IMG/VR virus record: IMGVR_UViG_3300020084_000003
Coordinates: 124,001-188,000 of that record
Direction: 5' to 3' (one strand)
DNA: 64,000 bases
Both the position numbers and the translations under genes were made by a program. Shown here in pieces: positions 3,227 to 39,524 of this stretch. The first letter of the stretch is position 1. Every line of letters begins with the position of its first letter. The notes under the pieces were generated by a model that saw only the letters and a program-made list of their open reading frames with translations, ran no database searches and had not been told where the DNA came from.

Positions 3227-3485
3227 TTTGAGACACAACTAGGCAAAAGAACAAACCGTGAACAAAAAATCAGCTTGACAAAAATCGTGATTCTAAGATA
3301 TTCTGGTGGTGGACCCGAATCGAAATATGAGAATCAAAAAGAGCCAAGAATATCATAGGATCGAAACATGCGTCAAGTAAAAATAAGAACGAGGTTTTTT
3401 CATTTTAGGGCTTGCATTGAGATTGATTCTTCCCTAGATATGAAATCACCGAAACGGCGAACCCGCCAGCAAAAGGACAGTTATC

Positions 3486-3674
3486 ATGACCTACGATCAA
3501 GCCAATGCCGCCGCCCGCGTCCTGCGTGAAGCTGGTCAATATGATGCAGCAGAACATATGGAGGTAGTCGCGGAAACTGCCCGTCGCCAGCATTTCCAAG
3601 ACATGGCACAGAAATGCTATGACGACCCGGATTTTGCACTAGCCTATGAAGAGGACATGCGAGAATTTAGATAG
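3486..3674 (+). CDS. Small hypothetical early protein
   Basis: Own promoter, AAGGA RBS, and a terminator AAAAAGCCCTTTGGGGCTTTTTT at 3676-3700. Confidence 0.75.
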   Translation: MTYDQANAAARVLREAGQYDAAEHMEVVAETARRQHFQDMAQKCYDDPDFALAYEEDMREFR

Positions 3675-4000
3675 GAAAAAAGCCCTTTGGGGCTTTTTTT
3701 AATGCGTCCTGAGAACAAAACGTGAACGTGAAAACACCCCTGTTTTTGGCCTCTGAGCGGCCTTTGATGTTTCCGGGTAGGGTGATGAGGCATGACGGCG
3801 CAACGGGCTTCTACGGGCAAAATAGAGCGTCTGGGAACGTGTCTGCATCGGAACATGAGTCTTAGGGTATCAACTCGGCAAAAGAACAAACCATGAACAA
3901 AAAAAGATTCAAAAAAATGCGTTTTCCCTATTGCGAATCGGAACGGGAACGCATATTCTTTAGTTATAGAGACAGACACACACCAACCCCGGAGGCTACC

Positions 4001-4234
4001 ATGACCGCTCGCATCCAACTCGACACCTTCAACGGTCGCGGCTCGCAGCATCACCTGAAAAATCCGAAGACCCCGGCAGAAGAAAAAGCCCTGATCGCGG
4101 GCGGCTCTAAAGTCCGGTTTCAATCCACCCCTATCTCGAAAAAAGAAGAGGCGGAAAATTTCATCGCCGCCCGTGCGAAACTCGCCCGCAACAGCAAGGC
4201 AAAAGTCACTCTGGAAAAAGCCCCTTGGGAATAA
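4001..4234 (+). CDS. Small basic protein, VxLxxxPW-tail family (MTARIQLDTFNGRGSQHHLK...VTLEKAPWE)
   Basis: GGAGG RBS at 3991. Close paralog of 7841-8071. Confidence 0.8.
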   Translation: MTARIQLDTFNGRGSQHHLKNPKTPAEEKALIAGGSKVRFQSTPISKKEEAENFIAARAKLARNSKAKVTLEKAPWE

Positions 4235-4485
4235 GGGGAACGGGCGGGGGAAACCCCGCCTTCCTTGTTTCACGTGAAACAATCTCGCAATGAAAAAAGT
4301 TGAAAAAGGGGATTGACCAAAATCAGCAAGGCATGATATTCTGAAATAGAATCAAAAATTTTTTAGATGATTCGCATGAAGATTCTATTTCAGAATATCA
4401 CCGAATCACGATATCCGTCAAGAGGAAAAATCGTTCACGTTTTGTTCTCTATGGGGAAAAAGAAAAAGCCCCGAAGGGCTTGATC

Positions 4486-4764
4486 TTATGCCGCGAGGGC
4501 TTTCATCAAAATGTCTTCAAGTTCGGTTTCTTCCGGTTCATCTTCATAGATGCGGTTTTCCATGAAGAGCGGACCTTGCCACTTGTCCAACATGAAATTG
4601 AATTGCTTGCGGACAAGGCGCATTTTCCACTGAGTCCGAACCGAAATGAATTCGTCCATATAGAAAGAGGTATCAAATTCCATGATTTCCGAAAAAGTCA
4701 TGGCGGCGATTTCCGCGCGGATGGCGACGAAAGCAGCGCGGGCGAGTTTTTTGGATGTAAACAT
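4486..4764 (-). CDS. Hypothetical early protein (MFTSKKLA...)
   Basis: AAAGGA RBS and terminator AAAAAGCCCCGAAGGGCTT. Confidence 0.7.
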   Translation of the reverse strand: MFTSKKLARAAFVAIRAEIAAMTFSEIMEFDTSFYMDEFISVRTQWKMRLVRKQFNFMLDKWQGPLFMENRIYEDEPEETELEDILMKALAA

Positions 4765-4991
4765 GGCTGATCCTTTCCAGATCAAGAGGGTTAAAGCTGG
4801 CCGGAACCTCGTTCCGTTAAGACATAGATAGACCATGATTCTGATTCCCGCAAGAGATATTTTCAACTATTTTTCAGTTATTTTGGGGATTGACGCATTG
4901 CAATATCCTATGATATTCTTCCCGCCAGACCGAATCACGTTCACGTTTTGTTCTCTATAGGGAAAAAGAAAAAGCCCCGAAGGGCTTGATC

Positions 4992-5114
4992 TTATTTTTC
5001 CCAAGGGGCTTTTGGCAGGCTGACCGGTTTTTTCGGGGTTTCCACTACCATCTGCGCGAGTTTGGCATCGGTGGAGTTGAGGGCAGTCACTTGGATCATC
5101 TTTTGAACGAACAT
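4992..5114 (-). CDS. 40-aa peptide, VxLxxxPW-tail family (MFVQKMIQVTAL...PVSLPKAPWEK); not in the ORF track
   Basis: Read by hand. It has an AAGGA RBS, an upstream promoter and a downstream terminator. Confidence 0.7.
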   Translation of the reverse strand: MFVQKMIQVTALNSTDAKLAQMVVETPKKPVSLPKAPWEK

Positions 5115-5488
5115 TTCCGGTCTTCCTTCTCTGGACGCGACCCCTTGCCGCGTTTCCTGATTCCTAGATAGGCCATGATGGCGAGTCGTGCAAGAGGAAA
5201 AATGAAAAAAGTTTGCCCGCCGTAGACCCCTCTATTTTGGCCTGTGACGGGCATTGACGTTTCCGGGTAGGGCGATGCCCCTGTGAGCCTTGCGGGGCTT
5301 CCTACCGCGCCACAGCGACTAGGACGACATACCCCGGACGATCCAGACGTATTTTGTGACGAAAGGAATTGTGCGGATAGTCGGCACGGAATTTCTCGAC
5401 AGTCCGCACAAATAGGTCAGGGAATTGAGTCGCCCATGATACCATCATTTCAACTGTGACAGATGCGAGTCTTGGCTTTTGCATTTTG

Positions 5489-5923
5489 TTATCCCCATTT
5501 ATCAAATAGATTTCGACATTCATTATGCCATTCTTTCACAGATTTATTATATTCCAAATCACCTTTTAGAAATTCAGCATATGAAATTGCATCCTTTTCT
5601 CGGAAGAAAAGGAAATGGGCGTTGTATCCATTAAGCCCGCCGATATTGTAATCTTTAAGTGATCCGCCAGAAGAATATTCTTCACCCGTATATTGTGAAA
5701 TATAGGTATATGCAAAAGAACCTTTTTTGGTAAATGTTTCATCTTCATATTCAACGCCATTAATTTCATTAAATGACGCAATTTTAGTGAAATGTCTTTT
5801 AGCCAAATACCCGCCTTGCGATACTTCCCAAATATCGGAACCAGTGAGCAAATGCATTTGCTCGACTGTTTCAATTGCGCCTTTAGGATATTCCCGCGCA
5901 GTTGTTCCTTTAAGTTTAATCAT
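5489..5923 (-). CDS. Hypothetical protein
   Basis: 144-aa ORF with an AAGGA RBS. Confidence 0.65.
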   Translation of the reverse strand: MIKLKGTTAREYPKGAIETVEQMHLLTGSDIWEVSQGGYLAKRHFTKIASFNEINGVEYEDETFTKKGSFAYTYISQYTGEEYSSGGSLKDYNIGGLNGYNAHFLFFREKDAISYAEFLKGDLEYNKSVKEWHNECRNLFDKWG

Positions 5924-5952
5924 GTCTTTATCCTTTCCCTATATGTGGCCCC

Positions 5953-6219
5953 TTATCGGGACCACTTGCGATTGATGTTCCACTTTTCCACGACGAGTCC
6001 CGTTTCCGTTTCATCCGTCACGATATACGCGACAGTTTTCTTGACGAGGGCGAAACGGGTTTCTTGATTTGGCCCGACAAAAACCAGATGTTTATAATCG
6101 CGAAATTTGTCCTCGGGGAACGCAGTTGCGTTCATATACTCGAAAGTTTTGCCGTGATCTTTTTCCACGAACATTCCGGCGATTTTGTCTTGCGAGATAT
6201 GAGCGGGGGCATAGGACAT
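5953..6219 (-). CDS. Hypothetical protein
   Basis: AGGAG RBS and own promoter. Confidence 0.7.
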   Translation of the reverse strand: MSYAPAHISQDKIAGMFVEKDHGKTFEYMNATAFPEDKFRDYKHLVFVGPNQETRFALVKKTVAYIVTDETETGLVVEKWNINRKWSR

Positions 6220-6337
6220 GGCGCAACTCCTTTTGGCGCGGTGGGTTTATCCTGTGATACATGATTCGCCTGTCCATGTCAAACCATTATTTCGCCTTGA
6301 CGCACGAAACCGTTGTGTGCTAGTCGTGGAAGTCTGA

Positions 6338-6571
6338 ATGGCAAGGAAAGGAATCATTGTGCTGCCCACATATTACGCAATTGATATTGTTACATCTCGC
6401 AAGGGCTTGCTAATGATGGCGCAGTTTCTTGGGCTTATGGCTTACGGAAATGATTTTGTGCAAGGCAATCGCATGATGACATATGACGCGCGAAACAAGG
6501 TTTTGAGCGTTACGATGACAAAACAAGACGCACTAAAACTGTCGGAAAAATTCAACTTTGAGTTCCAGTGA
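6338..6571 (+). CDS. Hypothetical protein, paralog of 13754-13972
   Basis: Shared PTYYA..IVT...GNRM..YD...DAL.LS..FNFEF. A parS site follows immediately. Confidence 0.75.
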   Translation: MARKGIIVLPTYYAIDIVTSRKGLLMMAQFLGLMAYGNDFVQGNRMMTYDARNKVLSVTMTKQDALKLSEKFNFEFQ

Positions 6572-6756
6572 TTTGTTTCACGTGAAACAATAGCCTTAGA
6601 GTCTTCTAGGCAAAAGAACAAAACGTGAACAAGATTAGGGCTTGACAGCATCATGATTCGATGATATTCTGGACTAGAGACTCGAATCTTCTGGTGATAA
6701 AAATCAGGTTTTACTTTTAGAATATCATATCGAATCGGGGTAAGTAAAGGGGCAAA

Positions 6757-7158
6757 TTATGCCCCCTGAGTCTTTCTTATTAGTTCGCCCATTTCATAGC
6801 TGAACCCGTGCGACCAACAAAAGCCTTCCCGGTCATACTTTGAATTAACATCATCCCCCGTGGCGTCAAACTGCCAGCGGATAACATCGCCCACACGGGC
6901 GTTAAGTTGGACGGCGAGGGCATGAACCCCGCGAATCCAATCATTATATCGGCGGGTTTCATCCTCAACCCGTTGCGCCTCATTGCTGGCGAGTTGCGCG
7001 ACAAGGTAAGAATAATCCTCGTCAAAAGCCTCGACCGAAGCCCAGACGTTCCAGCCGCGCGGGCGGCACCCGTAAACGTCTTTGTAAAGATCGGAGTAGC
7101 AATCATCCACGATCATGCAAACGGAACCAGCGGCGAATTCTTGGTCTTGAGCGAACAT
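6757..7158 (-). CDS. Hypothetical phage protein (YSDLYKDVYGCRPRG motif)
   Basis: AAGGA RBS before MFAQ. The motif is typical of a widespread phage hypothetical family. Confidence 0.7.
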   Translation of the reverse strand: MFAQDQEFAAGSVCMIVDDCYSDLYKDVYGCRPRGWNVWASVEAFDEDYSYLVAQLASNEAQRVEDETRRYNDWIRGVHALAVQLNARVGDVIRWQFDATGDDVNSKYDREGFCWSHGFSYEMGELIRKTQGA

Positions 7159-7412
7159 GGCGATCATCCTTTTTTGCACAGTTTTCCCTCGGAGCATCGC
7201 GCCCCGCAACACCTACGTAGCAGGGAATCACCCTGCTTGTCAAGCGTATATGCAAAGAAAAAATCGAATTATTTGGGGTTGACAGGCCGGGCGATTCTAC
7301 GATATTCTGAAATAGAGAGTCTATGCGAATCACTTGGAAGATTCGAGATTCTATTTCAGAATATCACACTCAGATTTCATGTAAAGATAAAAAAAGCCCC
7401 GAAGGGCTTAAT

Positions 7413-7586
7413 TTATGAAAACTCCCGGTCTACTATTTCCAGACGTTCCCAGACTTGCGCCCACGTGGAGTCGGCGGGAAGATCACACAGAAACATTTCC
7501 GCGTGGAACGTTGCATTGTTTGCAACGTCAATGGCTTCTTCCAGCGACAGTTCGGGGCGGGCTTGGACTTGGGCGAGGATGGACAT
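7413..7586 (-). CDS. 57-aa acidic hypothetical protein (MSILAQVQARPEL...)
   Basis: Read by hand. AAGGA RBS and a terminator at 7390-7409. Confidence 0.6.
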   Translation of the reverse strand: MSILAQVQARPELSLEEAIDVANNATFHAEMFLCDLPADSTWAQVWERLEIVDREFS

Positions 7587-7840
7587 TTTCAGTTTCCTTC
7601 AAACATGGTTGGTTCCGAGGACGTTCCCCGTGCCTCATACGTAGCTGATTCTTGTGTTTGTGTCAATATAGGAAAAGCATTATTTTAGTTTATTTTTGGG
7701 GTTGACGTAAAAAGTGAGTATGATATTCTGGACTAGACTCTTGATTCTCGCGTTCACGATTCGTTCTCATTGTGGGTTGTTCACGTTTTGTTCTGTTTCA
7801 CGTGAAACAAAAGCCCCCCGTTTCCGAGGGGCTTTTCCTT

Positions 7841-8071
7841 TTACCAAGGCATCGCGGGGAGGGAGACTTTCGCGGTTGACTTGCGGGCGAGGCGGGCGCG
7901 GGCGGCTTTCGCGTTTTCGATTTCTTCCGCTTTCGTGATCGGAGTATGTTGAAAGCGGACCTTGTTCCCGCCAGCGATCAGAGCGGCCTCTTCCGCTTTG
8001 CTTTTGGGGTTTTTCAGGTGGTGTTGGCTTCCGCGACCGTTGAAGGTATCCAGTTGAACCGCTGCGACCAT
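7841..8071 (-). CDS. Small basic protein, VxLxxxPW-tail family (...VSLPAMPW)
   Basis: Paralog of 4001-4234 in inverted orientation. Confidence 0.8.
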   Translation of the reverse strand: MVAAVQLDTFNGRGSQHHLKNPKSKAEEAALIAGGNKVRFQHTPITKAEEIENAKAARARLARKSTAKVSLPAMPW

Positions 8072-8619
8072 CTTTCCGTTCCTTCCGCTGTGGGCCTCTG
8101 CCCGTTTCCATACTTAAAGAATATGCACTCTTGATCCGATTCGCAACCCCCCAAATGCACTTTTTTGAATCTTTTTTGTTCATGATTTGTTCTCAGGTTT
8201 CGCGGCGAAACTGCGTTCACGTTTTGTTCTTTGGCCCTCTATTTTGCGCTGTGAGCGGCCTTGTGGGTTTTCGGGTGTGTGGGTATGGCAAAAGCCCGTA
8301 GGAACCACCTACGGGCTTCTACGGGCTTGTGAGAGGCATTATCGAAAACCTAGTGCCGCTGCGAAAAACTCCTTGAATAGATCGAAGAAGATTAGCAGAG
8401 GAAGGATTACCGCCATCAGCTTGATGATGAGATAAACCTTTAGTAGTGTGATGAATGCCCCCATCAGGTTGTTTTGAGGATGTAAAGAGCAGCCAGACCC
8501 AGAAATCCAAACGCTACGATGAACAACATATTGTTTTCCTTTCACTTTCCTAGCGGGTTTCACAGACACAACTTGCCAGCATCAAATTGGTTTCATGATG
8601 CTGGCAAGATTCTTCTAAG

Positions 8620-8745
8620 TCACTCGTCTTTCAACTGAAATTTCTTGTGAACCCCCGACTCGTATTGCTTGCGGGCGCTTTTGTTCTTGCGCGCGTTGCG
8701 GATTTGTTGCTTGGCGTTGTTCTTGTCGCGCTTTTGGTCTTTCAT
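8620..8745 (-). CDS. 41-aa highly basic peptide (MKDQKRDKNNAKQQIRNARK...)
   Basis: Read by hand. AAGGA RBS and an upstream promoter. Confidence 0.55.
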   Translation of the reverse strand: MKDQKRDKNNAKQQIRNARKNKSARKQYESGVHKKFQLKDE

Positions 8746-8962
8746 GATCCGGGTTTCCTTCTGTTTCCGGGTTTCTGTATCTTGAATGTATGGGGGGCCA
8801 GATGATTCGTCAATAGGAAAAAATAGGAAAGATTCTTTTTATTTGGGGTTGACAGTGTGGGGTGGGGATAATATTCTGAAATAGAATCCAGAATCATCGT
8901 TCACGATTCGTTCTCATGGGGTTTCGCTGCGAAACTGTTTCACGTGAAACAATGACATTGCC

Positions 8963-9154
8963 CTAAAGCAATGCCATAAGTTGAAACATGATGATGATAG
9001 CAGACAAACAAATAGTAAGAAGAAACGAACAAGTCAAAGCGTTAACTGTATCTTTAGCAATCGCGCAACGGATGCTAAGGTTAAGCAAAATCAACCCCAT
9101 CATGCAAAACGTAGCAGTAGCGCAAGAAGCGATGAAAAGAAGAAAGTGTTCCAT
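8963..9154 (-). CDS. Small two-TM membrane protein
   Basis: Hydrophobic 63-aa ORF flanked by two parS sites. Confidence 0.55.
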   Translation of the reverse strand: MEHFLLFIASCATATFCMMGLILLNLSIRCAIAKDTVNALTCSFLLTICLSAIIIMFQLMALL

Positions 9155-9218
9155 ACTATTTTCCTTTTGTTTCACGTGAAACATAGGGGCGGGATGATCC
9201 CGCCCCCTGTTGATTGCA

Positions 9219-9524
9219 TCAGGCTTGCACCGCTTCCGCTTGTGCAGCACGTTCGGCACGTTTCGCCGCGTTGCGTTCCATCGTGGCAACCCACGTCCGC
9301 GCACGGCCCGTCAGGGCAGGAACATGGCGCGGACGACCACGCTTGCCTTCAATCCGTTGTTCCTGAATCTCGACCAGACCAGCCTCGACCAGTTGCGCCG
9401 TCAGGTGACGCGAAGGGATGTTTTCAGCATCGCCCGCCTTGATCGCGACCAGCGCGGCAAGCTTGGCCTCTTTGCTGTTGAAGGTTGCCGGGCGACCACG
9501 GGCGGCTTTGATTTCTTTCGTCAT
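9219..9524 (-). CDS. AT-hook (RGRP) / winged-helix-like DNA-binding protein, copy 1
   Basis: Two RGRP motifs and the pattern 'PSRH...LVEAGLVE...RGRP..VPALTG'. Paralogs at 13167, 23299 and 25705. Confidence 0.75.
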   Translation of the reverse strand: MTKEIKAARGRPATFNSKEAKLAALVAIKAGDAENIPSRHLTAQLVEAGLVEIQEQRIEGKRGRPRHVPALTGRARTWVATMERNAAKRAERAAQAEAVQA

Positions 9525-11024
9525 GATGTAGTCCTTTCTTTGCTGTTGGGCGTCTTGCCCGTTTCCATGATTAAGAGATAGAGCATGATTCTGATTCGTG
9601 CAAGCACAAAATGCGATAGGAACGAAAATAGTTTTTGCATCTTCTCGGCAAAAGAACAAAACGTGAACGAATAGGTTTCGCGGCGAAACCACGACGCAAT
9701 GAGAACGAATCATGAACGGTGATTCTGGATTCTATTTCAGAATATCATACTCAGGTTTAGTGTCAACAAGAAAAAAAGCCCCGAAGGGCTTTTCCTCATT
9801 CCATGAAGTTTTCAAATTCTGTCCAGCTATATTCTTCCGCAACCCCATAGGTTTCTTGGAATTGCTTGAACTCACGTTCTGCCGCATCGTGCGAAAGATT
9901 GTAGTGGGTGAGCAGGAGGTTCATAATGTCTGCGGGCGAGAGCATGGCGGGTTCCTTTCCCTTGGCTATGATTAAGATATAGCATCAGATTGTGATTCGT
10001 GCAAGAGGTAAAATGACTTTTTTCAAATTATTTTTGGGGTTGACAGGATAGGGGAGGGGATGATATTCTGAAATAGAATCAAGAATCACCGTTCATGATT
10101 CGTTCTTATAGGTTTCGCCGCGAAACTGTTTCACGTGAAACAAAAGAAAGAGGGGGCGTTATGCCCCCTGTTTCCATCCTTCTGCGATTTTTTCTTGCAT
10201 ATCATCAAATGCGATATGTTTGGGGATAACGGTTTGCGTCATAGCTTTACCATCCCAATACAGAGTCGCAGTTACATCTTCGTGCCCGAAAGTGGACTCG
10301 TAGGTGATTTTGAGGTTGGAGTTGGTAATAGTAATCATGGCGGGGTTCCTTTCCTTTGCCGATTATTCTTTATAGCATTAGCGGCAGGTTGCGTCAACAG
10401 GAAAATGCGTCACCAGATAGATCAAATGAATCCTTTCACAATGTGCGGATTCTTTGAAATAGTGATTTGTTGCTTTGATGAAAGCAAACCGGAACGGGCG
10501 AAATGCCAGACGTTTATTGCGATAGACACGGGAACAGATAGGTTCCCAACGGAAACCGCGCAGAAACTTGTGGTTCCACTCGCAGGAACGATAGTAATGA
10601 GTCAAGTCGCGCATTGCCTTATCTCCTGCTAGGGTTTCCATCTATATTTATAGTTGCACGATTCGGGTGTCTATGTCAATATCTAAAAAATAATTGTGAC
10701 GCGAACATGACACTTGCAAACAACCTAAACGGGTGCTAAGGTTCTGGCAGTTGTAACGAAAGGAGCGAATCATGTTTGATATTGTCAAGAAAATAATTAC
10801 ATTCCCCGGAAAATTTGTCGATTGGTTTGAGGCGGAACGTGGAACTGGTGAAGGAAAAAATGGTTGGGTAGGTAAACCATCGCGGGACTAGGGAGGATGA
10901 AAGACTCCTCTTTTCCCTATTGACAGCATGGGGAGGGCATGATATTCTGAAATAGAATCTTGATTCTTGCGTTCATGATTCGTTCTTTTGCGGATAAAAG
11001 AAAAAGCCCCGAAGGGCTTTCCTG

Positions 11025-11213
11025 TTACCAAGGGGCTTTTGCCAGAGTGACTTTGACTTTCCGCTTTGCCGCTGCGCGTTTCTCTTGAGCCAGAGCGAAA
11101 GCCTTTTCATCTTTTGCGGTAATGGCAGGAGCGGCACAATTTCCGCAACGCTTCTCAAAATCGACCCGGTTCATGTTAGCGTGGGAATTGAAGTATTGAG
11201 CGGAGACTTGCAT
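11025..11213 (-). CDS. Small basic protein, VxLxxxPW-tail family (...KVTLAKAPW)
   Basis: Own promoter, RBS and terminator. Shared C-terminal motif. Confidence 0.75.
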   Translation of the reverse strand: MQVSAQYFNSHANMNRVDFEKRCGNCAAPAITAKDEKAFALAQEKRAAAKRKVKVTLAKAPW

Positions 11214-11318
11214 CGGGTTGCCCTTTCTTGGCTGGTGTAATTATAGAATATGCCTTGCCAGATGATTCGTCAACAGGAAAAATGAAGTTTTTTGAATCTT
11301 TTTTGTTCACGGTTTGTT

Positions 11319-11976: not shown

Positions 11977-12190
11977 TCGGGCTTTCCTTCTGCTTTCCCG
12001 TTTCCTTATCTAATAGATAGCCCATCCCAACATGATTCGCAAGAGGTATGATGCAGATTCTTTTTTTATTTTGTGCATTGACAGGTTGCGGGGTTGTGTG
12101 ATATTCTGCGCGACCAATTGACCAGATGATTCGTTGTTTCACGTGAAACATAAAGAAAAGGGCAGAGGTTTACCCCCTGCCCCTATGCCT

Positions 12191-13972: not shown

Positions 13973-14173
13973 AAGAAAGAAAGAGGCAGGGGAAACCCTG
14001 CCTCTTTTGTTTCACGTGAAACAGTTTCGCAGCGAAACCACCGAATCACTTTTCACGTGAACGCGGGAGAATATCAAATAAATAACTATAGGTCAACAGG
14101 AAAGATTGAGTTGACAAACCGTTCTGGTTGTGCGAGTATTGGAATCAGAACTCAAACATGAAAGGAATCGAAA

Positions 14174-15330: not shown

Positions 15331-15517
15331 TTCTGGGTTCCTTTCCCTTTGCTGATGATTCTTTATCTCACATCCCAAACGATTCGAAAAGCGAAAATTG
15401 ACATAGGGGCCAATTTTTTATAGTATTGACACTATACCCTCTCCTATGATATTCTTCCGCGCCCATATAGAGAGTGATTCGAAAAGGGTGTGACATTTCT
15501 GCCACACCCTCGGTAGG

Positions 15518-18805: not shown

Positions 18806-19751
18806 GGTTCTCGTTCCTTTCGGTTGTGTTTTGTTTCTCTGTGATTCTGTTATGCCATGAATGAAGATGATTCGCAAGCACTTTTTCAAAAATCTTTTTC
18901 CTTGACTTGATCTTGTGTTGTGTGATATTCTCTGCGAATTTTTCGAATCAAAAAAAGAGGGGGATTTCTCCCCCTTAGTTATTCGTTTACTTGCATTGCA
19001 ATTGCCCAGACACTTGCGCCTTCTTCAATGCTCATATCATGACGCTGACAAACTGCGGCAAGATTTGTTCCATCCGGTTGAATTTTCACAATTTCTTCCT
19101 TGATTTTCTCATACATGACTGCTTTGCCCATTATTCCCGTTCCCCTTCATCGTCAACCCGAACGTCCAGAAGTTGATTCCGATTGTCGCGGGCTGCAAGG
19201 CGTTGTTCGCGCCGTTGCTGGCGAACGCCATTGCGATCACGTTTCCGATCACGCGGGGTGAATTCTTCGTCGTCTTTTTCAAACCATTTCGCCATTTTGT
19301 TTCTCCTATGTCTGGCGCTTCGTTGTGATTCTGTTATAGCTGATTCGGTTCAGGTTGTCAAGAATAAGTTTTTTTCACCCATTCATCAAAATTGGTATCG
19401 AAACCCTCGAAAATACATTCCGAATTGACATAATTTTCAATCGTCCCATCATGAAACGAAACCGTGTAAATGGGTTCCAAATTGTCACCACCAACATCTT
19501 CCATCCGCATCCCCACTATATGGAAAGGTTTTCCGTTGTGGTTGGTGCAAGTATCTGCATAGAAAAGCTTTCTCAAATTAAGATTCGGCGTTCCCACGTC
19601 ATTCTCCTTTTGCTGTTGTGATTCCTTTATGCCATACCCATTCCGATTCGTCAATCAATTTCTTTCTATTGACACGATACAGTATGGTGTGATATTCTCT
19701 GCCGCCCAGACGAATCACAAAGAGTGTGACATTTCTGCCACACCCTTGTTT

Positions 19752-22344: not shown

Positions 22345-22715
22345 GCTAAACTCCTTTTGCTGGCGTTTCGTATGATTCTGTTATGCCATGCCAGAAACGA
22401 TTCGTCAACAGCAAAATTAAATTGAAAGAATGTTTTTTCGAATCACCCTTTCAAAACGCGCGGCAGAATATCATGGCGGCTGCGCTAGGTCAACAAGAAA
22501 AAACCGTGACATTTCTGCCACGGCTTGATTACTTCTGAACAATCTCTATTCCTTTGTCTCTCATATTCTCAATTATTGAACCCATGCCATAAGTCAATCC
22601 TGATAGCCATTTCATAGCCTTTTCTGGGTCTTTGGTCGTTTGCACTGGCATATCATTGCAGATGGAAACATAATCGTCACCATCTTTTTCAATTATATAT
22701 CTTCCGGTTGGTATC

Positions 22716-27448: not shown

Positions 27449-27591
27449 TCTCTTTGATCCTTCTGTTTCTGTTTCCGTTACATCTCTTATAGCCAATGCC
27501 GATGTGATTCGCAAGCACTTTCTTGGAAAACTTCGAGGTTGACAGGGTGATAGGATGATGATATTCTATAGAACAAAACGAATCGGAGACT

Positions 27592-28531: not shown

Positions 28532-28584
28532 TTGGTTTCCCTTTCTGTTTCGATGATTCTTTATCGCATGTCAGAAATGATTCG

Positions 28585-31718: not shown

Positions 31719-32892
31719 TCATCTCCTTCTTCAATTGGTGCAAAATTAACTTCGTCGTATTCGTTCCAGAACCAACGAACCTTGTAACGATCAGCGATTC
31801 GTGTTGCCAATTTTTCAATCTTTTCAATGCTATCTACATCGTAGTCAACCAGATTTTCAAACTCATCTAGTGCATTCCAAGCGCATGACATTTCTTTTTC
31901 ACTCCTTTGTTTCAAAAACACTCATCTTCGGAAGCATATGCAACGACAGCATCATGACCCGCAACTTGTGCAAACTCGCAATGCGTCACATCCTTCATAG
32001 ACTTCATATACATCCTTCCACTCTTCCTGTCAAGCATTAAACAGTGGACGTTATCAGATTTCATTGGCCTCATGATTCTACCCGGAACATAAAGATTCCA
32101 ATTAAGTTTGGTAGAACCAAATGGATTAAAAGTAAAGTCAATCATAATCAATCTTATAGTCAATAATATAATACTTGGAAGAACCATTGGGACTCGGATC
32201 AATGACACGACCAGATTTAATGTCAGACTCCATGTCTTTCTTGACTCGCTCAAGAGAACTCATGGGATATGCAAGTTCAAGAGTAGTCTTGATTCCTTCA
32301 AGAATTCCAGAAACAAACTCGACGTTATAGCGAATCGTGAAGCGATCAGTCATCATAGACTCCTCTGTTGATGTTGGAATCATAATGACACATGAGTCGT
32401 CATTGGTCAAGAAGAATCTTTTCCTTGACTTCATGATGGGACTCTGATATTCTATGGGATTTTTTAAAAAACTACGACGCGAAGCGGAGAAACGAGCGAA
32501 GCGAGTTTTCATGATTCTTATAACAAATTACGATTCTATAGAATCATATAATTAAAAAACACGATTCTCATAGAGTCAAAAACGAAGCGAAGCGAAGTTT
32601 TTGACCTGACTCTTCATAGTTATCTATCTTTTATTATATCCACTTTTTCAATTTTGTCAAGATAGAAAATGAATTATGGTCAAAGAAAAGAATTATTTCC
32701 TCTTTTGTTCTATTGGTGAAGAATATTATTCTTCTTGACAGACATAACAGAGAATGATATTCTTCCTTGTTCACCATAAAAAGAAAAGGTGATTCGGAAT
32801 TTCCGAATCACCTTTGCTCATGCAAAAATCAAAATGATAATAAGCACGACTACTACTAGAGGAATACCATACATTATTTTCTCCTTTATTGT

Positions 32893-34053
32893 TTACTTAA
32901 CAAAACCCTCCATCCATGCTTGCAGTTCCTCTTGACGAGAATCTTGATTCAGAAATTTGCGAAGATGATTGTTAAATACCTCCGTCAAATCCTTGTTGTC
33001 AAATCGTGCAAAAGCAAACTGACGCATAACTGAATCCTTGTCACCATTTACCGCATAATCTTTCTTTGAAGAATACTTGGTAACTGCTTCATAGGTGTAT
33101 GCATCAACTGCATGAAACGCAGCATACTTTAGTTTGAAAAATTCTTTCTCCGTTTCGTCAACAATAGCTTTGTCAGCATCATTGAGAAGCGGAATGAAAT
33201 CATCCAGTGTCCCATCCAGAATCATTTCCCAGATATGACGTTTCTTGGTGACAGCATCCTTTGCACGATGTTTGGTCACATAATCTTCTGCCTTTACTTT
33301 ATAGTATTCATTACCAAAAGTAATGACAGCGCCCTCTGTCCCTTTCAGAACACGAATTGTTTCCAAAAACTCATCCATGTTGTGCGGGGATTGAAGAAGC
33401 GGAACACGGTCATGGTCATGCAGCCAATTGTTATTATTATGAATGTTCAGATATTCACCAGTATGATTATCTCGCAATGCAAGCAAAATCAAACGTGGTT
33501 TTTCATAAAAAACCACATGAGGATTGTTCGGGCCGACATATTCAAAAATGGGAGTATGACCCAATTCCAAATGAAATCGCACCTGATCGTATCTTTTAGA
33601 ATTATCATCGTAAAAATCTTTTCCGAAAACGTCAGGAAAATCCTTGCGAAGATTGTTGATAGTATCAGACTCACCCTTGCGAGTGGCCCAACGAATTTCT
33701 CCGTTTAGTGTTTGTTCAATCATGAAAGGACGAACCATAGAACCATCCTCTTTCACCATGATCTTATGGTCACGGCTCATGTCAATCACATTCGCCTGAG
33801 TTTCCTCTAGCTGATTGACATTGAAAAATTTGTGAAAAGGACGAGACACGATACGGCCCTCTTTGTCGAAGAGTAGCCCACGGCACTCACGACGCATTTC
33901 CCAACCTGCATGTTTTTTTGAAAAAGTCTCACCAGTATCCACAACATAGTCGATCCAAGTGTAGTCACCTTTATCAGCGACAATGATTTCATCGAACCCT
34001 TTGATATGGGGCAGAACATCGTCAATGGTATGGATGGTCGGAAACTGATACAT
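32893..34053 (-). CDS. rnlA: T4 Rnl1-family RNA ligase
   Basis: 'RECRGLLFD', 'SRPFHKFFN', motif I 'KEDGS', 'FEYVGPNN', 'EGAV', 'YKVK'. Confidence 0.9.
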   Translation of the reverse strand: MYQFPTIHTIDDVLPHIKGFDEIIVADKGDYTWIDYVVDTGETFSKKHAGWEMRRECRGLLFDKEGRIVSRPFHKFFNVNQLEETQANVIDMSRDHKIMVKEDGSMVRPFMIEQTLNGEIRWATRKGESDTINNLRKDFPDVFGKDFYDDNSKRYDQVRFHLELGHTPIFEYVGPNNPHVVFYEKPRLILLALRDNHTGEYLNIHNNNNWLHDHDRVPLLQSPHNMDEFLETIRVLKGTEGAVITFGNEYYKVKAEDYVTKHRAKDAVTKKRHIWEMILDGTLDDFIPLLNDADKAIVDETEKEFFKLKYAAFHAVDAYTYEAVTKYSSKKDYAVNGDKDSVMRQFAFARFDNKDLTEVFNNHLRKFLNQDSRQEELQAWMEGFVK

Positions 34054-36244: not shown

Positions 36245-36702
36245 TTATCTTTTTCCAAAATCTGTTTCAATTCCCAATACCGCTTCTGATATTTGACCAT
36301 CCGCTCAATATCCTTGTCACGCATTCCTTTCAGACGGCGAAGATCAGAGTTATGAGTCAAGTCAGCCATCTTCACACGAATGGCATCAAAGTTTGTTTTC
36401 AGATTCTCATAATACTCATCTTCTGTCTGACCGGGCATCTTGGTCATGTCACTGACACCCTCAATGATCCGATCTGTGAAACCAATATCACGCATCTCAG
36501 CAAACGTCAAGTTGGAATCTTCAACAGCGTCATGAAGAAGGGCAATGCACTGCAACTCTTCATCGTCACTGTCCAAAATATTCATGACAGCCAGAGGATG
36601 CATTGCATAAGGATTGCCACCACGATCAAACTGCCCGCTGTGAGCGTTTACCATTGTGTGCAGAGCCTTTTCGAGCAGTTCGCCTTTTTTCATCTTCAAC
36701 AA
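36241..36702 (-). CDS. HD-domain RelA/SpoT-type hydrolase (small alarmone hydrolase-like)
   Basis: 'AHSGQ.DRGG.PY..HP..V', 'ALLHDAVED', 'VKMADLTHN'. Confidence 0.85.
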   Translation of the reverse strand: MLKMKKGELLEKALHTMVNAHSGQFDRGGNPYAMHPLAVMNILDSDDEELQCIALLHDAVEDSNLTFAEMRDIGFTDRIIEGVSDMTKMPGQTEDEYYENLKTNFDAIRVKMADLTHNSDLRRLKGMRDKDIERMVKYQKRYWELKQILEKDK

Positions 36703-36843
36703 CCTCTCCTAGTTCCCATATGAAAGCAAACGGATTGCTCTTCTCATAGTGATATCTACTACCCCAGAACCACAATGTCAAGTATAAAATCTCTCCGGGG
36801 CGAAAGATAATATGCAACCGCCCCGGAATGGTATAATTGATTT

Positions 36844-37173
36844 TCAATTGAAAAACTTTTTCAGAGAATCAGGAATGTCAACATCAGCCTTGCCCAGATT
36901 TTCATTCTCTTCTGCGTCACGCGCCTGTTCCAGCATGTTGACAATGGCATGGCTCATCTGAGATGCCTGAATGCACTCGCTAACACCACGGGTTGCAGCA
37001 TCAAGCAAAACAATGGTCGGAAGCGAAATGCCTTTCGGCGTATCAGCCTCATCAGCAACAGCCATCAGAAACTTTTCATAAGTCCCAAGCATGGCTTGAA
37101 GTTCAGGATAGCCAGCACAAGACTTGCGAATACCCACCATCTGTTCTTTCACTTTTGAACGAAAATCTTCCAT
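36844..37173 (-). CDS. Hypothetical protein
   Basis: ORF within the operon, with an RBS. Confidence 0.6.
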   Translation of the reverse strand: MEDFRSKVKEQMVGIRKSCAGYPELQAMLGTYEKFLMAVADEADTPKGISLPTIVLLDAATRGVSECIQASQMSHAIVNMLEQARDAEENENLGKADVDIPDSLKKFFN

Positions 37174-37175
37174 AG

Positions 37176-37580
37176 TTATACCCTTTCTTCAATTTGTTTC
37201 AAATACTCAAGAACCATGTTCACCGATTCCCGATTCGCTTCCATCTCCCACTCACGCTCAAGATAGGGGATGTGTTTCATCTTGTCAAGCTTTGCTCCAA
37301 GACCATCCCGAAGGTGTTGCTTGATATGCACACACTCATGAAACATCGTCTTCACAATGTCTCCAAGACCACGATTCCCTTCTAGCACAATCAAATAATC
37401 TGTCAATGATTCGTCAATCAACATTCCGTTCAAACCATCAGCCATGTCATCAATCAAAATGACAACAGAAATGTCAGCATGTTCAATGCCAAGATATTTG
37501 AAAGCAAACTCAGCACTGGACCGAATCTGTTCAACACGACCCTCTTCCAGACCATAATCATTGCTGATGGTAAGTTTCAT
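37176..37580 (-). CDS. Zinc metallopeptidase-like protein
   Basis: HECVH motif with a downstream 'WEMEA'. Confidence 0.75.
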   Translation of the reverse strand: MKLTISNDYGLEEGRVEQIRSSAEFAFKYLGIEHADISVVILIDDMADGLNGMLIDESLTDYLIVLEGNRGLGDIVKTMFHECVHIKQHLRDGLGAKLDKMKHIPYLEREWEMEANRESVNMVLEYLKQIEERV

Positions 37581-39524
37581 GCGTTAACTCCATAAATTTC
37601 TTTTGCACAAGCAAGGCGATGCTCTTGGCTAGAACTACCACCAATACAATTCTTCATTGCCGATTCACGTGGATCAGCAAAAATCATGAAAAACACCGAA
37701 ACCGAAAGAATCGCCAATACAATAATAACCAATACTTTATCATCCGAATCCATAGTTATTTCCTTTTCTTGACCAGAGATACATCCATGTATGTCGGTTT
37801 ATAGTCAGTCCCATGCTCACGAATGAGAAGGTTGAAACCGTCGATCTTCAAAACATCAAACCATGCCGCATCCGGTTGTTTGTTGAATGCTACAACATCA
37901 CCTACATGAATCTTCATGACAATCTCCTATGTGTTTCGCTTCGTTCCTTATAGAGTGATTCCATCTCCCTGTCAACACAACAATGATCTTGACTTCTCTC
38001 TCCCCCAAATGATATTCTCCCACGCCCCGCGAATCAAAAACGGCGTCTGTTAAGACGCCGTTGATTTTCTTCCAGTAATATAAATACCTCTTGTCGTTTG
38101 ACTTTCTCTAACTTCAAATCCATAGTTGTTATCAGTAATAATTGTATTTTTATTCAATTCTTCATAAATTTTATGAAATGATTGTCGAAACTTATTGTCA
38201 CCCATAATATGATATGCAAGAAGCGCATAAAGATCACGAGCCTCTGTCAAAGTCATTTCCAATTTGAAAGTCGGCTCACCAACCATTTCAATCTTTGCCA
38301 TTTTTGTTCCTTTCGTTTTCAATTCGCTCAACCAATTCATTGAATTCATCTTCGGTCAAATCTTCAACCGCTTCCATGAACTCCAAAATAACAGGATCAA
38401 AATCATCTTCCATCACTTATCCTTTTGCAACAAAATATTCAGTTTGATGTTGATATGGTATGCATATTGGATGATCCAAAAACATGCTGCCAAAATCGAA
38501 TACTGCCATGAAACAATAAACGAAAGAACAACAAAAACCCAAAAAGATATTTCAAAAATGGCAACCAAATTATTGTCAACCTTTACCTCGTCCATCATTC
38601 ACCCCCTCGGAAAAACATTATTATAATTCTTGGCCTGAACCATCACAGCAAGCATCGCTTTAGACATTCATACAACTCCTATACGCGGTTTCATTACAAC
38701 CCTTATAGAGTGATTCGTATCCCATGTCAACAACATTCTTCGGATTGACACAACCCCAACACTATGATATTCTCCCAAACCCCGATTCGAAAAAGAGGCC
38801 GCAATGGGCCTCAATCTTCAACCTGTTCTTCATTCTTCTTAATAGAAATAGTAATGGTATTTTCATCAGGCATATAACCATAAGAAACCTTTACTACTTG
38901 GTAAACCTCTGGATACCACGGATGAGTCCCCATAACAACTTCTTCACCAATGCGAGGAATATGAGGAAGAGAATCATATGTTCCCTTATATACTTCCTCG
39001 TCAACATCATAATAACTAATTCGCATATGTGTCTCCTATAACACGGTTTCATTACATCCCTTCTATACCGATTCTCATTCCATGTCAACAACAAAATTCA
39101 GCTTGACACAGACCCCTCAATGTGATATTCTCCCCGCCCCGTAACCCCCTGATTCGAAACCATAATTTAAAATGGTGTGAAAAACGGCCATTTTATGCGA
39201 TTTTATAGTGCAGATATACAGCTATTTGAAGATTCGTTGATTTCATTGAATAAAATATTGAATGAAATCAACGAGTAATGTTTAAATTATACCTTTTCTC
39301 GCAGAGTGCCAAGAGCGGCAATATTTGCTTCCAGATTAATATTTAATTGGGAAACACGGCGAACCTGCTCACGGGGAATGAACTCTTCCGTATAAGAACC
39401 ATCATCCTCTTTATGGAAAAGAATAACACTCTCATTATTGTAATAAAGTGAATGAACATCATAAAAGGTGTCATTAACGCCATTGGTATAATAGATTTTA
39501 TATGTGAACATATCTTATTCTCCT

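What the first reader, a model, noticed from the sequence alone, without database searches (positions are those of the whole stretch)
3276..39131. More than 40 strong 'empty' sigma70 promoters with an almost invariant TGATATTCT -10
Seen: nearly every cassette carries TTGAC-N17/18-TATTCT with an extended TG. It usually points away from the gene and runs into a hairpin within about 30-90 nt, with no ORF. The spacer sequence varies freely while the -35, -10 and spacing are conserved, which indicates selection on promoter function. Inference: these may be RNA polymerase sinks, sources of short RNAs, supercoiling activators of the divergent gene promoter, or motors for transcription-driven genome entry.
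Basis: partly seen in the sequence, partly recalled or inferred. Interest (0 to 1): 0.7.

Follow-up and report, generated by a model that had tools for sequence, protein, structure and literature searches.

The report
Flipped strong promoters between phage cassettes
A lake T4-like phage separates its small mobile genes with a conserved two-promoter linker, and in this genome the stronger promoter is mostly turned round, so it fires into the neighbouring gene's terminator and makes no protein, yet it stays perfectly conserved.

Summary
TTGAC-N16-18-TATTCT occurs 45 times (0.27 expected). All 45 copies in the 285-kb genome lie at window 3275-39131, and 40 carry TGATATTCT. Only the -35, the spacing and a 9-10 bp extended -10 are conserved; spacers are unrelated. 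Decayed copies are almost absent.

The genome is a T4-like phage from lake metagenomes, and the region is its hyperplastic cassette region. Genes and their gene-proximal promoter (P_B) lie on the - strand. 34 of the 45 strong promoters (P_A) lie on +, and by my hand classification about 36 have no gene to drive.

New context:
- Wastewater relatives carry the same promoter, but there mostly co-oriented with genes, as terminator, P_A, P_B, gene. This resembles the PeSL cassettes of T4-type phages.
- Orthologous genes have P_A in tandem in a relative and flipped here.
- Spacing between P_A and P_B falls in steps of about 10 bp.
- Each P_A carries a TGATTCG box, the best GcrA motif (14-fold enriched), at positions typical of GcrA-activated promoters. 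This suggests an alphaproteobacterial host.

How flipped copies act is inferred: probably through RNA polymerase occupancy (insulation, or interference with P_B). No transcript data exist. I rate it a new variant of a known kind.

The parts
3275..39131 (.). Whole array: 45 exact P_A promoters (34 on +, 11 on -) plus 3 real variants with a weaker -35. It lies in the cassette (hyperplastic) region of a T4-like phage.
   Evidence: Phage identity.
19669..19698 (+). Typical flipped ('empty') P_A: TTGACA, 18-nt spacer, TG-extended TATTCT. About 27 copies have this arrangement.
   Evidence: It points away from gene 19358-19597 (-) and towards the 3' end of gene 19752-19985 (-).
19627..19654 (-). P_B, the gene-proximal promoter back-to-back with the P_A at 19669. 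It has a TTGACG -35 running into a GAATC box, 17 nt, then a TGG-extended CATAAA. The gap between the two -35 elements is 14 bp.
   Evidence: P_B-type motifs lie only on the gene strand (15/15 here, 16/16 and 10/10 in relatives).
19711..19717 (+). CGAATCA (= TGATTCG on the other strand). This box travels with P_A. It starts 13 nt after the -10, about +6 to +10 if transcription starts 7 nt after the -10.
   Evidence: Motif and allowed positions from PMC4647560 and PMC9976885.
19722..19745 (.). Terminator hairpin of gene 19752-19985 (-), which the flipped P_A runs into. It belongs to the GTGTGACATTTCTGCCACAC family (14 copies).
   Evidence: It is more stable on the gene strand (G.U) than on the P_A strand (A.C).
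22465..22493 (-). Tandem (PeSL-like) P_A. The order is terminator 22501-22526, P_A, TGATTCG at 22436-22445, P_B at 22381-22408, then gene 21973-22344 (-).
   Evidence: The other tandem copies are 9739, 13635, 15899, 23852, 26021 and 30784 (all -).
22381..22408 (-). P_B downstream of the tandem P_A. Its -35 starts 56 nt after the P_A -10.
27539..27567 (+). P_A back-to-back with the promoter of gene 26849-27448 (-). It directly drives an inserted HNH endonuclease gene at 27595-28197 (+).
   Evidence: The orthologous gene in the relative also has a flipped copy but no HNH gene.
4313..4421 (.). Face-to-face pair of P_A copies (4313-4342 on +, 4392-4421 on -) with 49 nt between the two -10 elements and no ORF between them. 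It lies between convergent genes. Similar pairs occur at 3275/3347, 6642/6719 and 7279/7358.
11245..11273 (-). Gene-proximal promoter with a P_B-type -35 (TTGACGAATC) and the TATTCT -10. It drives gene 11025-11213 (-).
   Evidence: Similar hybrids at 3931-3959 (+) and 8118-8146 (-).
14068..14096 (-). Mirror-image flipped copy. It is back-to-back (14-bp gap) with the promoter of the + strand gene 14174-14377 and faces the terminator of the + strand gene 13754-13972.
   Evidence: It shows that the arrangement is defined locally, not by genome strand.
12078..12107 (+). P_A whose 30-nt core is identical to the copy at 13045-13074, while both flanks are unrelated.
   Evidence: flank identity 9/40 and 14/40.
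6719..6748 (-). Variant P_A with a TTTACT -35. It is the partner of the copy at 6642 (+).
   Evidence: Other variants at 7358-7385 (-) and 18009-18037 (-).
15426..15455 (+). Flipped P_A upstream of gene 14959-15330 (-). The orthologue in the relative has the same cartridge in tandem orientation.
8849..8955 (+). Left-block type of P_A, followed by a conserved stretch of about 80 nt: GAAATAGAATC, a GTTCACGATTCGTTCT repeat, a GTTTCGC-N-GCGAAAC hairpin and the TGTTTCACGTGAAACA palindrome.
32735..32815 (+). P_A facing the 14-bp hairpin (32785-32815) that terminates the RNA ligase gene 32893-34053 (-).

Best explanation
What it is (shown). P_A is a promoter of the housekeeping-sigma type: TTGAC(A), 16-18 nt, TGATATTCT, usually followed by a GC-rich start region. 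A TGATTCG-type box lies 8-21 nt after the -10. P_A is one half of a conserved linker that separates small mobile gene cassettes in the hyperplastic region of a T4-like phage. The linker reads: terminator hairpin of the previous cassette, P_A cartridge, gene-proximal promoter P_B (which carries its own GAATC boxes), a conserved leader with ribosome-binding site, then the gene.

P_B always points at the gene. The P_A cartridge occurs in either orientation, and its distance to P_B changes in steps of about 10 bp. In tandem orientation it is an ordinary strong cassette promoter. This is 9 of 45 copies here, but most copies in a wastewater relative. In flipped orientation (by my count about 36 of 45 here) it is back-to-back with P_B. 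There it fires into the previous cassette's terminator hairpin, or into another P_A, and can make at most an RNA of roughly 50-130 nt with no ORF.

How it works (inferred).
- The flipped copies act through RNA polymerase binding and firing, not through their product.
- Flipping uncouples a gene from the strong promoter and leaves it under P_B alone.
- Polymerase sitting at or leaving P_A head-on to the previous gene blocks read-through, so each cassette is insulated.
- Polymerase at P_A also competes or interacts with P_B at a fixed helical phase. By my recollection this resembles lambda PR acting on PRM, about 82 bp away.
- The conserved linker also supplies homology for cassette shuffling.
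- The TGATTCG boxes suggest that both promoters use the host's GcrA-sigma70 holoenzyme on GANTC-methylated DNA. That implies an alphaproteobacterial host and a possible methylation-based timer.
For: Promoter anatomy and selection:
- 45 copies against 0.27 expected.
- Information is confined to the -35, the spacing and the extended -10. Spacers are unrelated.
- 45 perfect copies against 4 with one mismatch. Among flipped copies the ratio is 34 to 0.

Phage and region:
- rIIA, rIIB, Dda, DNA and RNA ligases; gp23.
- Cassettes are ORFans of higher GC than the rest of the genome.

Gene strand. P_B is strictly on the gene strand in three genomes.

Relatives:
- 29 copies in 40 kb, 21 of them co-oriented with genes; and 13 copies in 9.3 kb, 7 co-oriented.
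- The same linker is read directly.
- Cassette order is shuffled between genomes.
- An orthologous gene has a tandem cartridge in one genome and a flipped one in the other.

Phasing:
- Back-to-back gaps of 13-14 bp (20 cases), 23-24 (7) and 34-36 (8).
- Tandem distances of 36-38, 46-47, 56-58 and 68 nt.

Dead end: the first hairpin spans a median of 25-55 nt after the -10, and P_A copies face one another in four pairs.

GcrA boxes:
- TGATTCG occurs 52 times against 3.8 in shuffles, at 8 times the density of the rest of the genome. The relative has 72 copies.
- The boxes lie near -28 and -20 and in the early transcribed region from about +2 to +18. These fit or border the published windows of -30, -20 and +5 to +30 (PMC4647560; PMC9976885).

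Four lake samples show the same fixed arrangement.
Against: - No transcription start, termination or polymerase occupancy data exist. No RNA run was listed and no cultured relative shares the linker.
- The hairpins are optimised for the gene strand. Flipped P_A may therefore read through and make antisense RNA instead of a dead-end RNA.
- Phasing could partly reflect linker length changing by whole A/T-tract units rather than selection on promoter interplay.
- Gaps of 24 and 35 bp would weaken simple steric interference.
- Neither insulation nor interference explains the face-to-face pairs well.
- The host is unknown, and the phage encodes no CcrM-type or N6_Mtase-type methylase and no GcrA. 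The GcrA reading rests on motif identity and position alone.
Confidence: 0.45

Rival explanations
1. Flipped copies have no function of their own. The cartridge or the cassettes invert and recombine often, so each copy spends time in the gene-driving orientation. Selection there, or exchange with active copies, keeps the consensus intact.
For: Both orientations occur at orthologous genes. Cassettes are heavily shuffled. Identical 30-nt cores sit in unrelated flanks. Many cartridges carry a T-run upstream (54 of 87), and fewer carry an A-run after the box (27 of 87), so either orientation can keep the neighbours' terminator tail and A-tract.
Against: Flipped copies here are more perfect (34 perfect, 0 with one mismatch) than co-oriented ones (11 to 4 here, 20 to 10 in the relative). 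Spacers are saturated with change while the -35 and -10 are intact. Assembled contigs from eight samples show no real orientation polymorphism: the joints are repeat artefacts, and one search shows none. Contigs do drop rare variants, so this test has low power.
Confidence: 0.2
2. The product matters. Flipped P_A makes short RNAs, or longer antisense RNAs if the hairpin leaks. These pair with the 3' end of the convergent mRNA and control its stability, as lambda OOP RNA does for cII or as convergent type I antitoxin RNAs do. Alternatively they act as decoys for an RNA-binding host factor.
For: P_A faces the 3' end of a gene across a shared hairpin in about 27 cases. The hairpin is weaker on the P_A strand, which allows read-through into antisense. 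Left-block copies are followed by a conserved stretch of about 80 nt.
Against: Outside the left block the transcribed leader is not conserved apart from the box and an A-run. If termination works, overlap with the mRNA is only the self-paired hairpin. No Rfam family matches. The helical phasing with P_B is not explained.
Confidence: 0.12
3. RNA polymerase sink. Dozens of near-perfect promoters, multiplied by genome replication, draw the host sigma70 (or GcrA-sigma70) holoenzyme away from host promoters. Pointing them at terminators makes them harmless to the phage.
For: Perfect consensus is kept whatever the orientation. There are 45-48 sites in 36 kb. The TGATTCG boxes would attract GcrA-bound holoenzyme.
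Against: A promoter that fires and terminates within about 60 nt recycles polymerase instead of holding it. Relatives keep most copies productive. The fixed position and phase relative to P_B are unnecessary for a sink.
Confidence: 0.1
4. Supercoiling pump. Divergent firing of P_A leaves negative supercoils behind it and so opens the weak -10 of P_B.
For: The two promoters are back-to-back with a weak -10 in P_B. The P_A start region is GC-rich.
Against: Transcripts are cut short by a hairpin at 25-55 nt. By my own knowledge of the ilvY-ilvC work, such coupling grows with transcript length. The tandem copies show the same phasing, which this model does not predict.
Confidence: 0.07
5. Not a promoter. 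The bipartite motif is bound by a phage protein or recombinase (a cassette recombination site), or it drives transcription-powered genome entry.
For: The -10 region is invariant over 9-10 bp, more than sigma70 needs. The sites mark cassette boundaries.
Against: TTGAC at 17 +/- 1 bp from a TG-extended TAnnnT with A at -11 and T at -7 is the sigma70 geometry. Copies with RBS and ATG right after them exist (27539, 11245). In relatives the motif sits where gene promoters sit. The Pfam models tried found no sigma70_r2, AsiA, GcrA or two methylase families; recombinases were not searched. For entry: the sites form an internal cluster, point both ways, and are absent from the other 250 kb.
Confidence: 0.05

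Closest known systems
PeSLs (promoter-early stem-loops) of T4-type phages (Arbiol et al. 2010, PMC2839356; Comeau et al. 2014, PMC4122927)
   Same: Both are intergenic composites of a near-consensus sigma70-type early promoter and a terminator stem-loop. Both are repeated through the hyperplastic regions of T4-like phages, flank ORFan cassettes, and are associated with shuffling between relatives. G/C runs occur in some spacers.
   Different: PeSL promoters are described as ending in the Shine-Dalgarno sequence and start codon of the downstream gene. Here about 80% point the other way. The linker holds two promoters at phased spacing. The -10 is an invariant TGATATTCT. TGATTCG boxes are built in. 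Mini-circles were not testable.
GcrA/CcrM-dependent sigma70 promoters of Caulobacter (Haakonsen et al. 2015, PMC4647560; Wu et al. 2023, PMC9976885)
   Same: The most enriched 7-mer is TGATTCG, the published best GcrA motif. The boxes lie near -28 and -20 and in the early transcribed region, mostly inside the published windows.
   Different: These promoters are in a phage genome. Methylation, the host and GcrA dependence are unknown. The phage encodes neither GcrA nor a CcrM-type methylase.
Lambda PR/PRM back-to-back promoters (my own knowledge; not found in the paper library)
   Same: A strong promoter sits back-to-back with a weak one. Start sites are about 82 bp apart in lambda and about 84 bp for the 14-bp gap class here. 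In lambda, polymerase at PR hinders PRM.
   Different: No repressor operators have been identified here. The strong promoter has no gene. Gap classes of 24 and 35 bp also exist.
Lambda OOP RNA and convergent type I antitoxin RNAs (my own knowledge)
   Same: A short transcript comes from a strong promoter that is convergent with the 3' end of a gene and shares a terminator with it.
   Different: Overlap with the mRNA is little more than the hairpin. There are dozens of copies with unrelated leaders.
Invertible promoter switches (fimS, Bacteroides invertons; my own knowledge)
   Same: A promoter segment is found in both orientations relative to the gene it can drive.
   Different: There are no long inverted repeats and no invertase was seen. 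No mixed orientations appear in a population. Differences are seen only between diverged phages.

Membership tests
Bacterial housekeeping-sigma (sigma70-type) promoter | -35 TTGACA-like hexamer, 17 +/- 1 nt spacer, and -10 TAnnnT with A at -11 and T at -7 | tested here: met
   45/45 by construction. In addition, A after TTGAC in 28/45, and spacers of 16, 17 or 18 nt in 3, 19 and 23 sites.
Bacterial housekeeping-sigma (sigma70-type) promoter | Extended -10 TG at -15/-14 | tested here: met
   T in 41/45 and G in 43/45, neither required by the search.
Bacterial housekeeping-sigma (sigma70-type) promoter | Transcription start and polymerase occupancy at the site | not testable with these tools
   No RNA run was listed for this DNA. 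The DNA runs are metagenome contigs.
PeSL regulatory cassette | Lies in intergenic spaces of a hyperplastic region of a T4-like phage | tested here: met
   rIIA, rIIB, Dda, ligases and gp23 identify the phage. The region holds ORFan cassettes of deviant GC.
PeSL regulatory cassette | Composite of a sigma70-like early promoter and a stem-loop terminator | tested here: met
PeSL regulatory cassette | Promoter co-oriented with the downstream gene, ending in its Shine-Dalgarno sequence and start codon | tested here: not met
   Met by only about 9 of 45 copies here, though by 21 of 29 in the relative. P_B fills that role in every linker.
PeSL regulatory cassette | Associated with insertion, deletion and exchange of ORFs between related phages | tested here: met
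   About a dozen cassette genes are shared with the relative, in scrambled order. Identical promoter cores sit in unrelated flanks.
PeSL regulatory cassette | Mini-circle formation by recombination between copies | not testable with these tools
   This needs inverse PCR or long reads from infected cells. The contig joints proved to be repeat artefacts.
GcrA-activated methylated promoter | YGAKTCK box centred near -30, near -20, or at +5 to +30 | tested here: met
   TGATTCG is enriched 14-fold. Boxes lie at -30 to -26 in P_B and at -22 to -18 in several P_A spacers. They also start 8-9, 12-13 or 20-21 nt after the -10. The nearest class (about +2 to +6) lies at the edge of the window.
GcrA-activated methylated promoter | N6-adenine methylation of the GANTC site, and a host with CcrM and GcrA | not testable with these tools
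   The host is unknown. The phage itself lacks the N6_N4_Mtase, N6_Mtase and GcrA families.
Invertible promoter switch (inverton) | Inverted repeats flanking the segment, and both orientations present within one population | tested here: not met
   Only T-run and A-run flanks were found, and not in all copies. In one search one contig of depth 39 spans the stretch in one sample, and the shorter contigs of three others match it with no strand-change joints. This is a low-power test.
Integron cassette array | attC-type recombination sites and an integron integrase | not tested
   I saw no attC-like imperfect palindrome at the boundaries while reading the linkers, and no integrase among the proteins scanned. 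No dedicated search was run.

The most novel reading that the evidence does not exclude
A T4-like phase that lacks MotA and AsiA times and insulates its accessory genes in two ways. First, it uses arrays of deliberately dead-end, near-perfect promoters that can be set in either orientation. Second, it uses the host's epigenetic GcrA/CcrM system: TGATTCG boxes are built into both promoters of every linker. Promoter activity would then follow the methylation state of injected versus replicated phage DNA. Flipped promoters would act as polymerase roadblocks or competitors rather than as sources of RNA.
Probability: 0.25. Interest if true: 0.8.

Novelty: new variant of a known kind. Interest (0 to 1): 0.6.

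Why it matters
Conserved promoter-terminator cassettes are the proposed engine of gene shuffling in T4-type phages. They have been described only as ordinary promoters pointing at genes. Here the strongest promoter of the linker is kept perfect while pointing at nothing, and it sits at a fixed helical phase to the real gene promoter. This points to a use of promoters as DNA-bound regulatory parts (insulators, competitors or timers). The TGATTCG boxes would, if confirmed, be a case of a lytic phage wiring its early programme to a host cell-cycle methylation reader. They would also assign an uncultured phage group to alphaproteobacterial hosts. The parts are short and modular, so the ideas can be tested with reporters.

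Tried and rejected
- RNA evidence: no RNA run was listed.
- Population variants: the joints and loose ends all trace to other copies of the repeats outside the laid 6-kb stretch, so I reject them as evidence of recombination. One search shows a fixed arrangement.
- Cultured relatives: megablast and blastn of the window and of a relative's linker against 50,697 phage records found nothing.
- IMG/VR scans:
  - The bare promoter pattern returned only single, chance-level hits.
  - Two longer patterns found none, or only single hits.
  - Flanks of distant ATPase relatives hold no copies.
- Rfam: no family in the window or in the ORF-free stretch.
- Phage-encoded factors: no AsiA, sigma70 region 2, GcrA, N6_N4 or N6 methylase. 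The AsiA control rang nowhere, so that negative is weak.
- tRNAs: none.
- Ideas considered and dropped:
  - R-loop origin: the start regions are C-rich on the non-template strand, which disfavours R-loops (my own knowledge).
  - Integron-like array: no attC-like sites or integrase were seen.
  - Alternative -10 registers (GATATT, ATATTC): these give wrong spacing or lose A at -11.

Full report
1. THE OBSERVATION

The pattern TTGAC-N16-19-TATTCT matches 45 times in the window, against 0.27 expected from shuffles. TGATATTCT matches 44 times against 1.34. The window is positions 124,001-188,000 of a single 284,776-bp virus record. All 45 matches in that record fall at window 3275-39131.

After TTGAC, TATTCT is the only recurring -10 hexamer: 45 occurrences, all in this region. 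The next most frequent hexamers occur 8 times or fewer and lie elsewhere.

I aligned the sites on the -10:
- The base before TATTCT is A in 45/45 sites, and the two before it are TG in 41 and 43 sites. None of this was required by the search.
- Spacers are 16, 17 or 18 nt in 3, 19 and 23 sites.
- A T-rich tract lies just upstream of the -35.
- No other position carries information.

Spacers share 29% identity on average, which is about random. They are, however, enriched in G3 or C3 runs (20/45 against 9.9 expected).

Relaxing the pattern adds only four one-mismatch sites. Three are real, with TTTAC or TTGCC as the -35. The two-mismatch class is near chance (17 seen, 12.4 expected). The family is therefore sharply peaked on the consensus.

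2. WHAT GENOME AND REGION THIS IS

The flanks encode rIIA, rIIB, a Dda-like helicase, DNA ligase and RNA ligase. The genome encodes a gp23 major capsid protein. Its closest cultured relatives are Stenotrophomonas phage DLP6, Sinorhizobium phages phiN3 and phiM12, and Methylophilales phage Melnitz, at about 69-71% identity. It is a T4-like phage assembled from lake-water metagenomes.

The promoter-rich stretch is a cassette region. It holds small ORFs, mostly without known families, at 42-50% GC. The rest of the genome is about 36-38% GC.

This region has its own regulatory vocabulary. All of the repeated motifs listed below are confined to it. The rest of the genome instead repeats a different terminator of the GGACC-TTGC-GGTCC type.

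3. GENE ORIENTATION AND CLASSES

A JGI contig identical to window 11973-32344 carries gene calls. Together with RBS and codon-position GC, these put almost all cassette genes on the - strand.

Each gene or small operon is preceded by a second, less uniform promoter that I call P_B. Typical examples read TTGACGAATCG, about 10 nt, then TGGCATAA or TGCGATAA, then GAATCA. This is a TTGACG -35 running into a GAATC box, a 17-nt spacer and a TG-extended -10. P_B motifs lie only on the gene strand: 15/15 here, and 16/16 and 10/10 in two relatives.

The strong promoter, P_A, lies 34 times on + and 11 times on -.

I classified the 45 sites by reading the sequence, so the counts are approximate. A cruder automatic pass agrees in outline.
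- About 27 are back-to-back with a P_B and face the hairpin at the 3' end of the next gene.
- Six exact copies, with two variant partners, form four face-to-face pairs with no ORF between them.
- Three are other dead ends.
- Seven lie in tandem: terminator, P_A, P_B, gene.
- Two drive a gene directly (27539 drives an HNH endonuclease gene; 11245 drives a 62-aa gene).

One flipped copy on the - strand (14068) is paired with a + strand gene. The arrangement is therefore defined locally, not by genome strand.

4. WHAT THE FLIPPED COPIES RUN INTO

The first strong hairpin begins a median of 25 nt and ends 55 nt after the -10. If transcription starts about 7 nt after the -10, this gives an RNA of roughly 50-60 nt. 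Left-block and face-to-face copies would give longer RNAs, up to about 130 nt.

These hairpins are first of all the terminators of the convergent genes:
- A strict scan calls most of them on the gene strand only.
- In the 14-copy family GTGTGACATTTCTGCCACAC, a G.U pair on the gene strand becomes an A.C mismatch on the P_A strand. This costs about 5 kcal/mol.

Termination of P_A transcripts is therefore likely but may be partial.

5. RELATIVES CHANGE THE PICTURE

A cassette protein (26849-27448, - strand) has homologues of 60-75% identity in other metagenomes. I fetched their contigs from wastewater and other samples. They hold the same promoter at the same density: 29 exact copies in 40 kb of one contig and 13 in 9.3 kb of another.

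In those contigs most copies point the same way as the genes (21 of 29, and 7 of 13). Read directly, the linker is: terminator hairpin, T-run, P_A, GC-rich start, TGATTCG, A-run, P_B, a conserved leader with ribosome-binding site, ATG.

Further comparisons:
- About a dozen cassette genes are shared with the window, but in scrambled order.
- For one shared gene the cartridge is in tandem in the relative and flipped in the window, between the same landmarks.
- For another shared gene it is flipped in both.
- Two window copies have identical 30-nt cores in unrelated flanks.
- Both genomes place the cassette region right after a tandem array of paralogous genes of about 125-145 aa.

6. EVIDENCE THAT FLIPPED COPIES ARE MAINTAINED

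- Flipped copies in the window are 34 perfect to 0 with one mismatch.
- Co-oriented copies are 11 to 4 in the window and 20 to 10 in the relative.
- Spacers and flanks have diverged to randomness.
- In the best-covered lake sample one contig spans the 6-kb stretch tested. The shorter contigs of three other samples match it, with no joints or strand changes.

This looks like purifying selection on the bipartite site in the flipped state, not a recent accident.

7. PHASING

Where P_A is back-to-back with a P_B-type -35, the gap between the two -35 hexamers is 13-14 bp in 20 cases, 23-24 bp in 7 and 34-36 bp in 8. Five cases fall outside these classes.

In tandem linkers the distance from the P_A -10 to the P_B -35 clusters at 36-38, 46-47, 56-58 and 68 nt.

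The two promoters therefore keep a fixed helical phase. The sequence between them consists of phased T and A runs.

8. TGATTCG BOXES

GANTC sites are 3-4 times denser in the region than elsewhere. The enrichment is specific:
- TGATTCG occurs 52 times against 3.8 in shuffles, at 8 times the density of the rest of the genome.
- CGATTCG occurs 31 times, at 16 times the density of the rest.
- The relative has 72 and 27 copies.

TGATTCG is the published consensus for the Caulobacter sigma70 cofactor GcrA at methylated GANTC (PMC4647560). Published box positions are -30 +/- 2, -20 +/- 1 and +5 to +30 (PMC9976885).

Here the boxes lie:
- at -30 to -26 in P_B;
- at -22 to -18 in several P_A spacers;
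- starting 8-9, 12-13 or 20-21 nt after the P_A -10, about +2 to +18 if transcription starts 7 nt after the -10. The nearest class is at the edge of the published window.

The downstream box moves with P_A when the cartridge is flipped, so it belongs to the promoter.

The phage encodes no GcrA, no CcrM-type or N6 methylase, no sigma70 region 2 and no AsiA that the models could find. I infer an alphaproteobacterial host whose GcrA-bound holoenzyme is used by both promoters. This is an inference from motif identity and position only.

9. MECHANISM

Shown:
- a promoter-type site under selection;
- its place in a two-promoter linker;
- its two orientations;
- its dead-end context;
- the phasing;
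- the built-in boxes.

Inferred: flipped copies work through polymerase binding and firing. Flipping removes the strong promoter from the gene and leaves P_B in charge. Polymerase at P_A faces read-through from the previous cassette and should block it. It also sits at a fixed phase next to P_B, with start sites about 84, 94 or 105 bp apart. By my own knowledge this recalls lambda PR hindering PRM at 82 bp.

This reading explains three things: why the RNA need not be long or conserved, why the consensus must be perfect, and why position and phase are fixed. It explains the face-to-face pairs poorly.

Rivals:
- a by-product of frequent inversion;
- functional short or antisense RNAs;
- a polymerase sink;
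- a supercoiling pump;
- a non-promoter binding site, or an entry motor.

They are listed with their evidence in the Rival explanations section. None can be excluded without transcript data, but the last two are the weakest.

10. COMPARISON WITH WHAT IS KNOWN

The closest described system is the PeSL of T4-type phages: a strong early promoter plus stem-loop, repeated in hyperplastic regions and mediating shuffling (PMC2839356; PMC4122927).

This array shares the location, the composition and the link to shuffling. It differs in four ways:
- The defining co-orientation with the downstream gene is not met by about 80% of copies.
- The linker has two phased promoters.
- The -10 is invariant over 9-10 bp.
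- GcrA-type boxes are built in.

I file it as a new variant of that kind, not as a plain member.

11. LIMITS

There is no transcriptome, no host and no cultured relative. Class counts rest on my reading of the sequence plus a crude automatic pass. The phasing statistics use a simple pattern for P_B. Contig-based population data cannot see rare variants.

Noticed in passing
window 3248-11305 (16 copies); also L008, L028, L029: The motif GTTCA(C/T)G-N-TT-N-GTTCT has GTTC repeated one helical turn apart. It is confined to the left block of the cassette region. The same motif occurs in tandem arrays next to the same terminator hairpin in unrelated IMG/VR contigs. It looks like an operator or iteron shared among freshwater phages.
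   Followed up: partly
window 4268, 6576, 7796, 8938, 9170, 10129, 12137, 13111, 14010, 16786: A perfect palindrome built on TTTCACGTGAAA (usually TGTTTCACGTGAAACA) occurs ten times and only in this region, mostly between P_A and the next terminator. A variant (TGTTTCATGTGAAACA) is present in the relative.
   Followed up: partly
window 15490-29735 (14 copies); L008-L030: The terminator hairpin GTGTGACATTTCTGCCACAC is reused 14 times here. The exact 20-mer also occurs once each in 23 otherwise unrelated viral contigs, far more than I would expect by chance. A single terminator sequence seems to circulate widely.
   Followed up: partly
window 277-3226 (+ strand); L164 5900-10615: A tandem array of paralogous genes of about 125-145 aa (6 here, about 12 in the relative) has no Pfam match. 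In both phages it lies directly next to the cassette region. It is co-oriented with the cassettes in the relative but opposite to them here.
   Followed up: partly
window 27595-28197 (+) and 11319-11837 (-): There are two low-GC HNH endonuclease genes. The one at 27595 sits exactly between a flipped P_A and the terminator it would otherwise hit, so it uses the 'empty' promoter. The relative lacks an HNH gene at that site but has several elsewhere.
   Followed up: partly
window 20150-21070: About 0.9 kb on the gene strand has no ORF of 50 aa or more. It lies between a P_B-like promoter (about 21075-21115, - strand) and a terminator hairpin (20115-20141). There is no Rfam match even at E = 1. 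It could be a non-coding RNA gene or a decayed cassette.
   Followed up: partly
window, - strand upstream of many cassette genes (e.g. 15331-15360, 16274-16300); L157 10815-10839: A near-identical leader (GAATCA, then tcagcaaagggaaaggaacc, then ATG) precedes unrelated genes in three genomes. P_B plus this leader form a second conserved block that could serve as recombination homology.
   Followed up: partly
whole genome outside window 3000-40000: The core genome repeats a different terminator type: GGNCC stems with a TTGC or TTGT loop, with the top 12-mers occurring 9-12 times. It has no recurring promoter word. The cassette region therefore uses a foreign regulatory grammar.
   Followed up: no
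window 12170-12184, 12693-12707, 13075-13095, 13130-13159: CCCTGCCCC / GGGGCAGGG runs recur in a P_A spacer, in a start region and in the arms of nearby terminators. They recall the GGGG...CCCC motif discussed for PeSL recombination.
   Followed up: no
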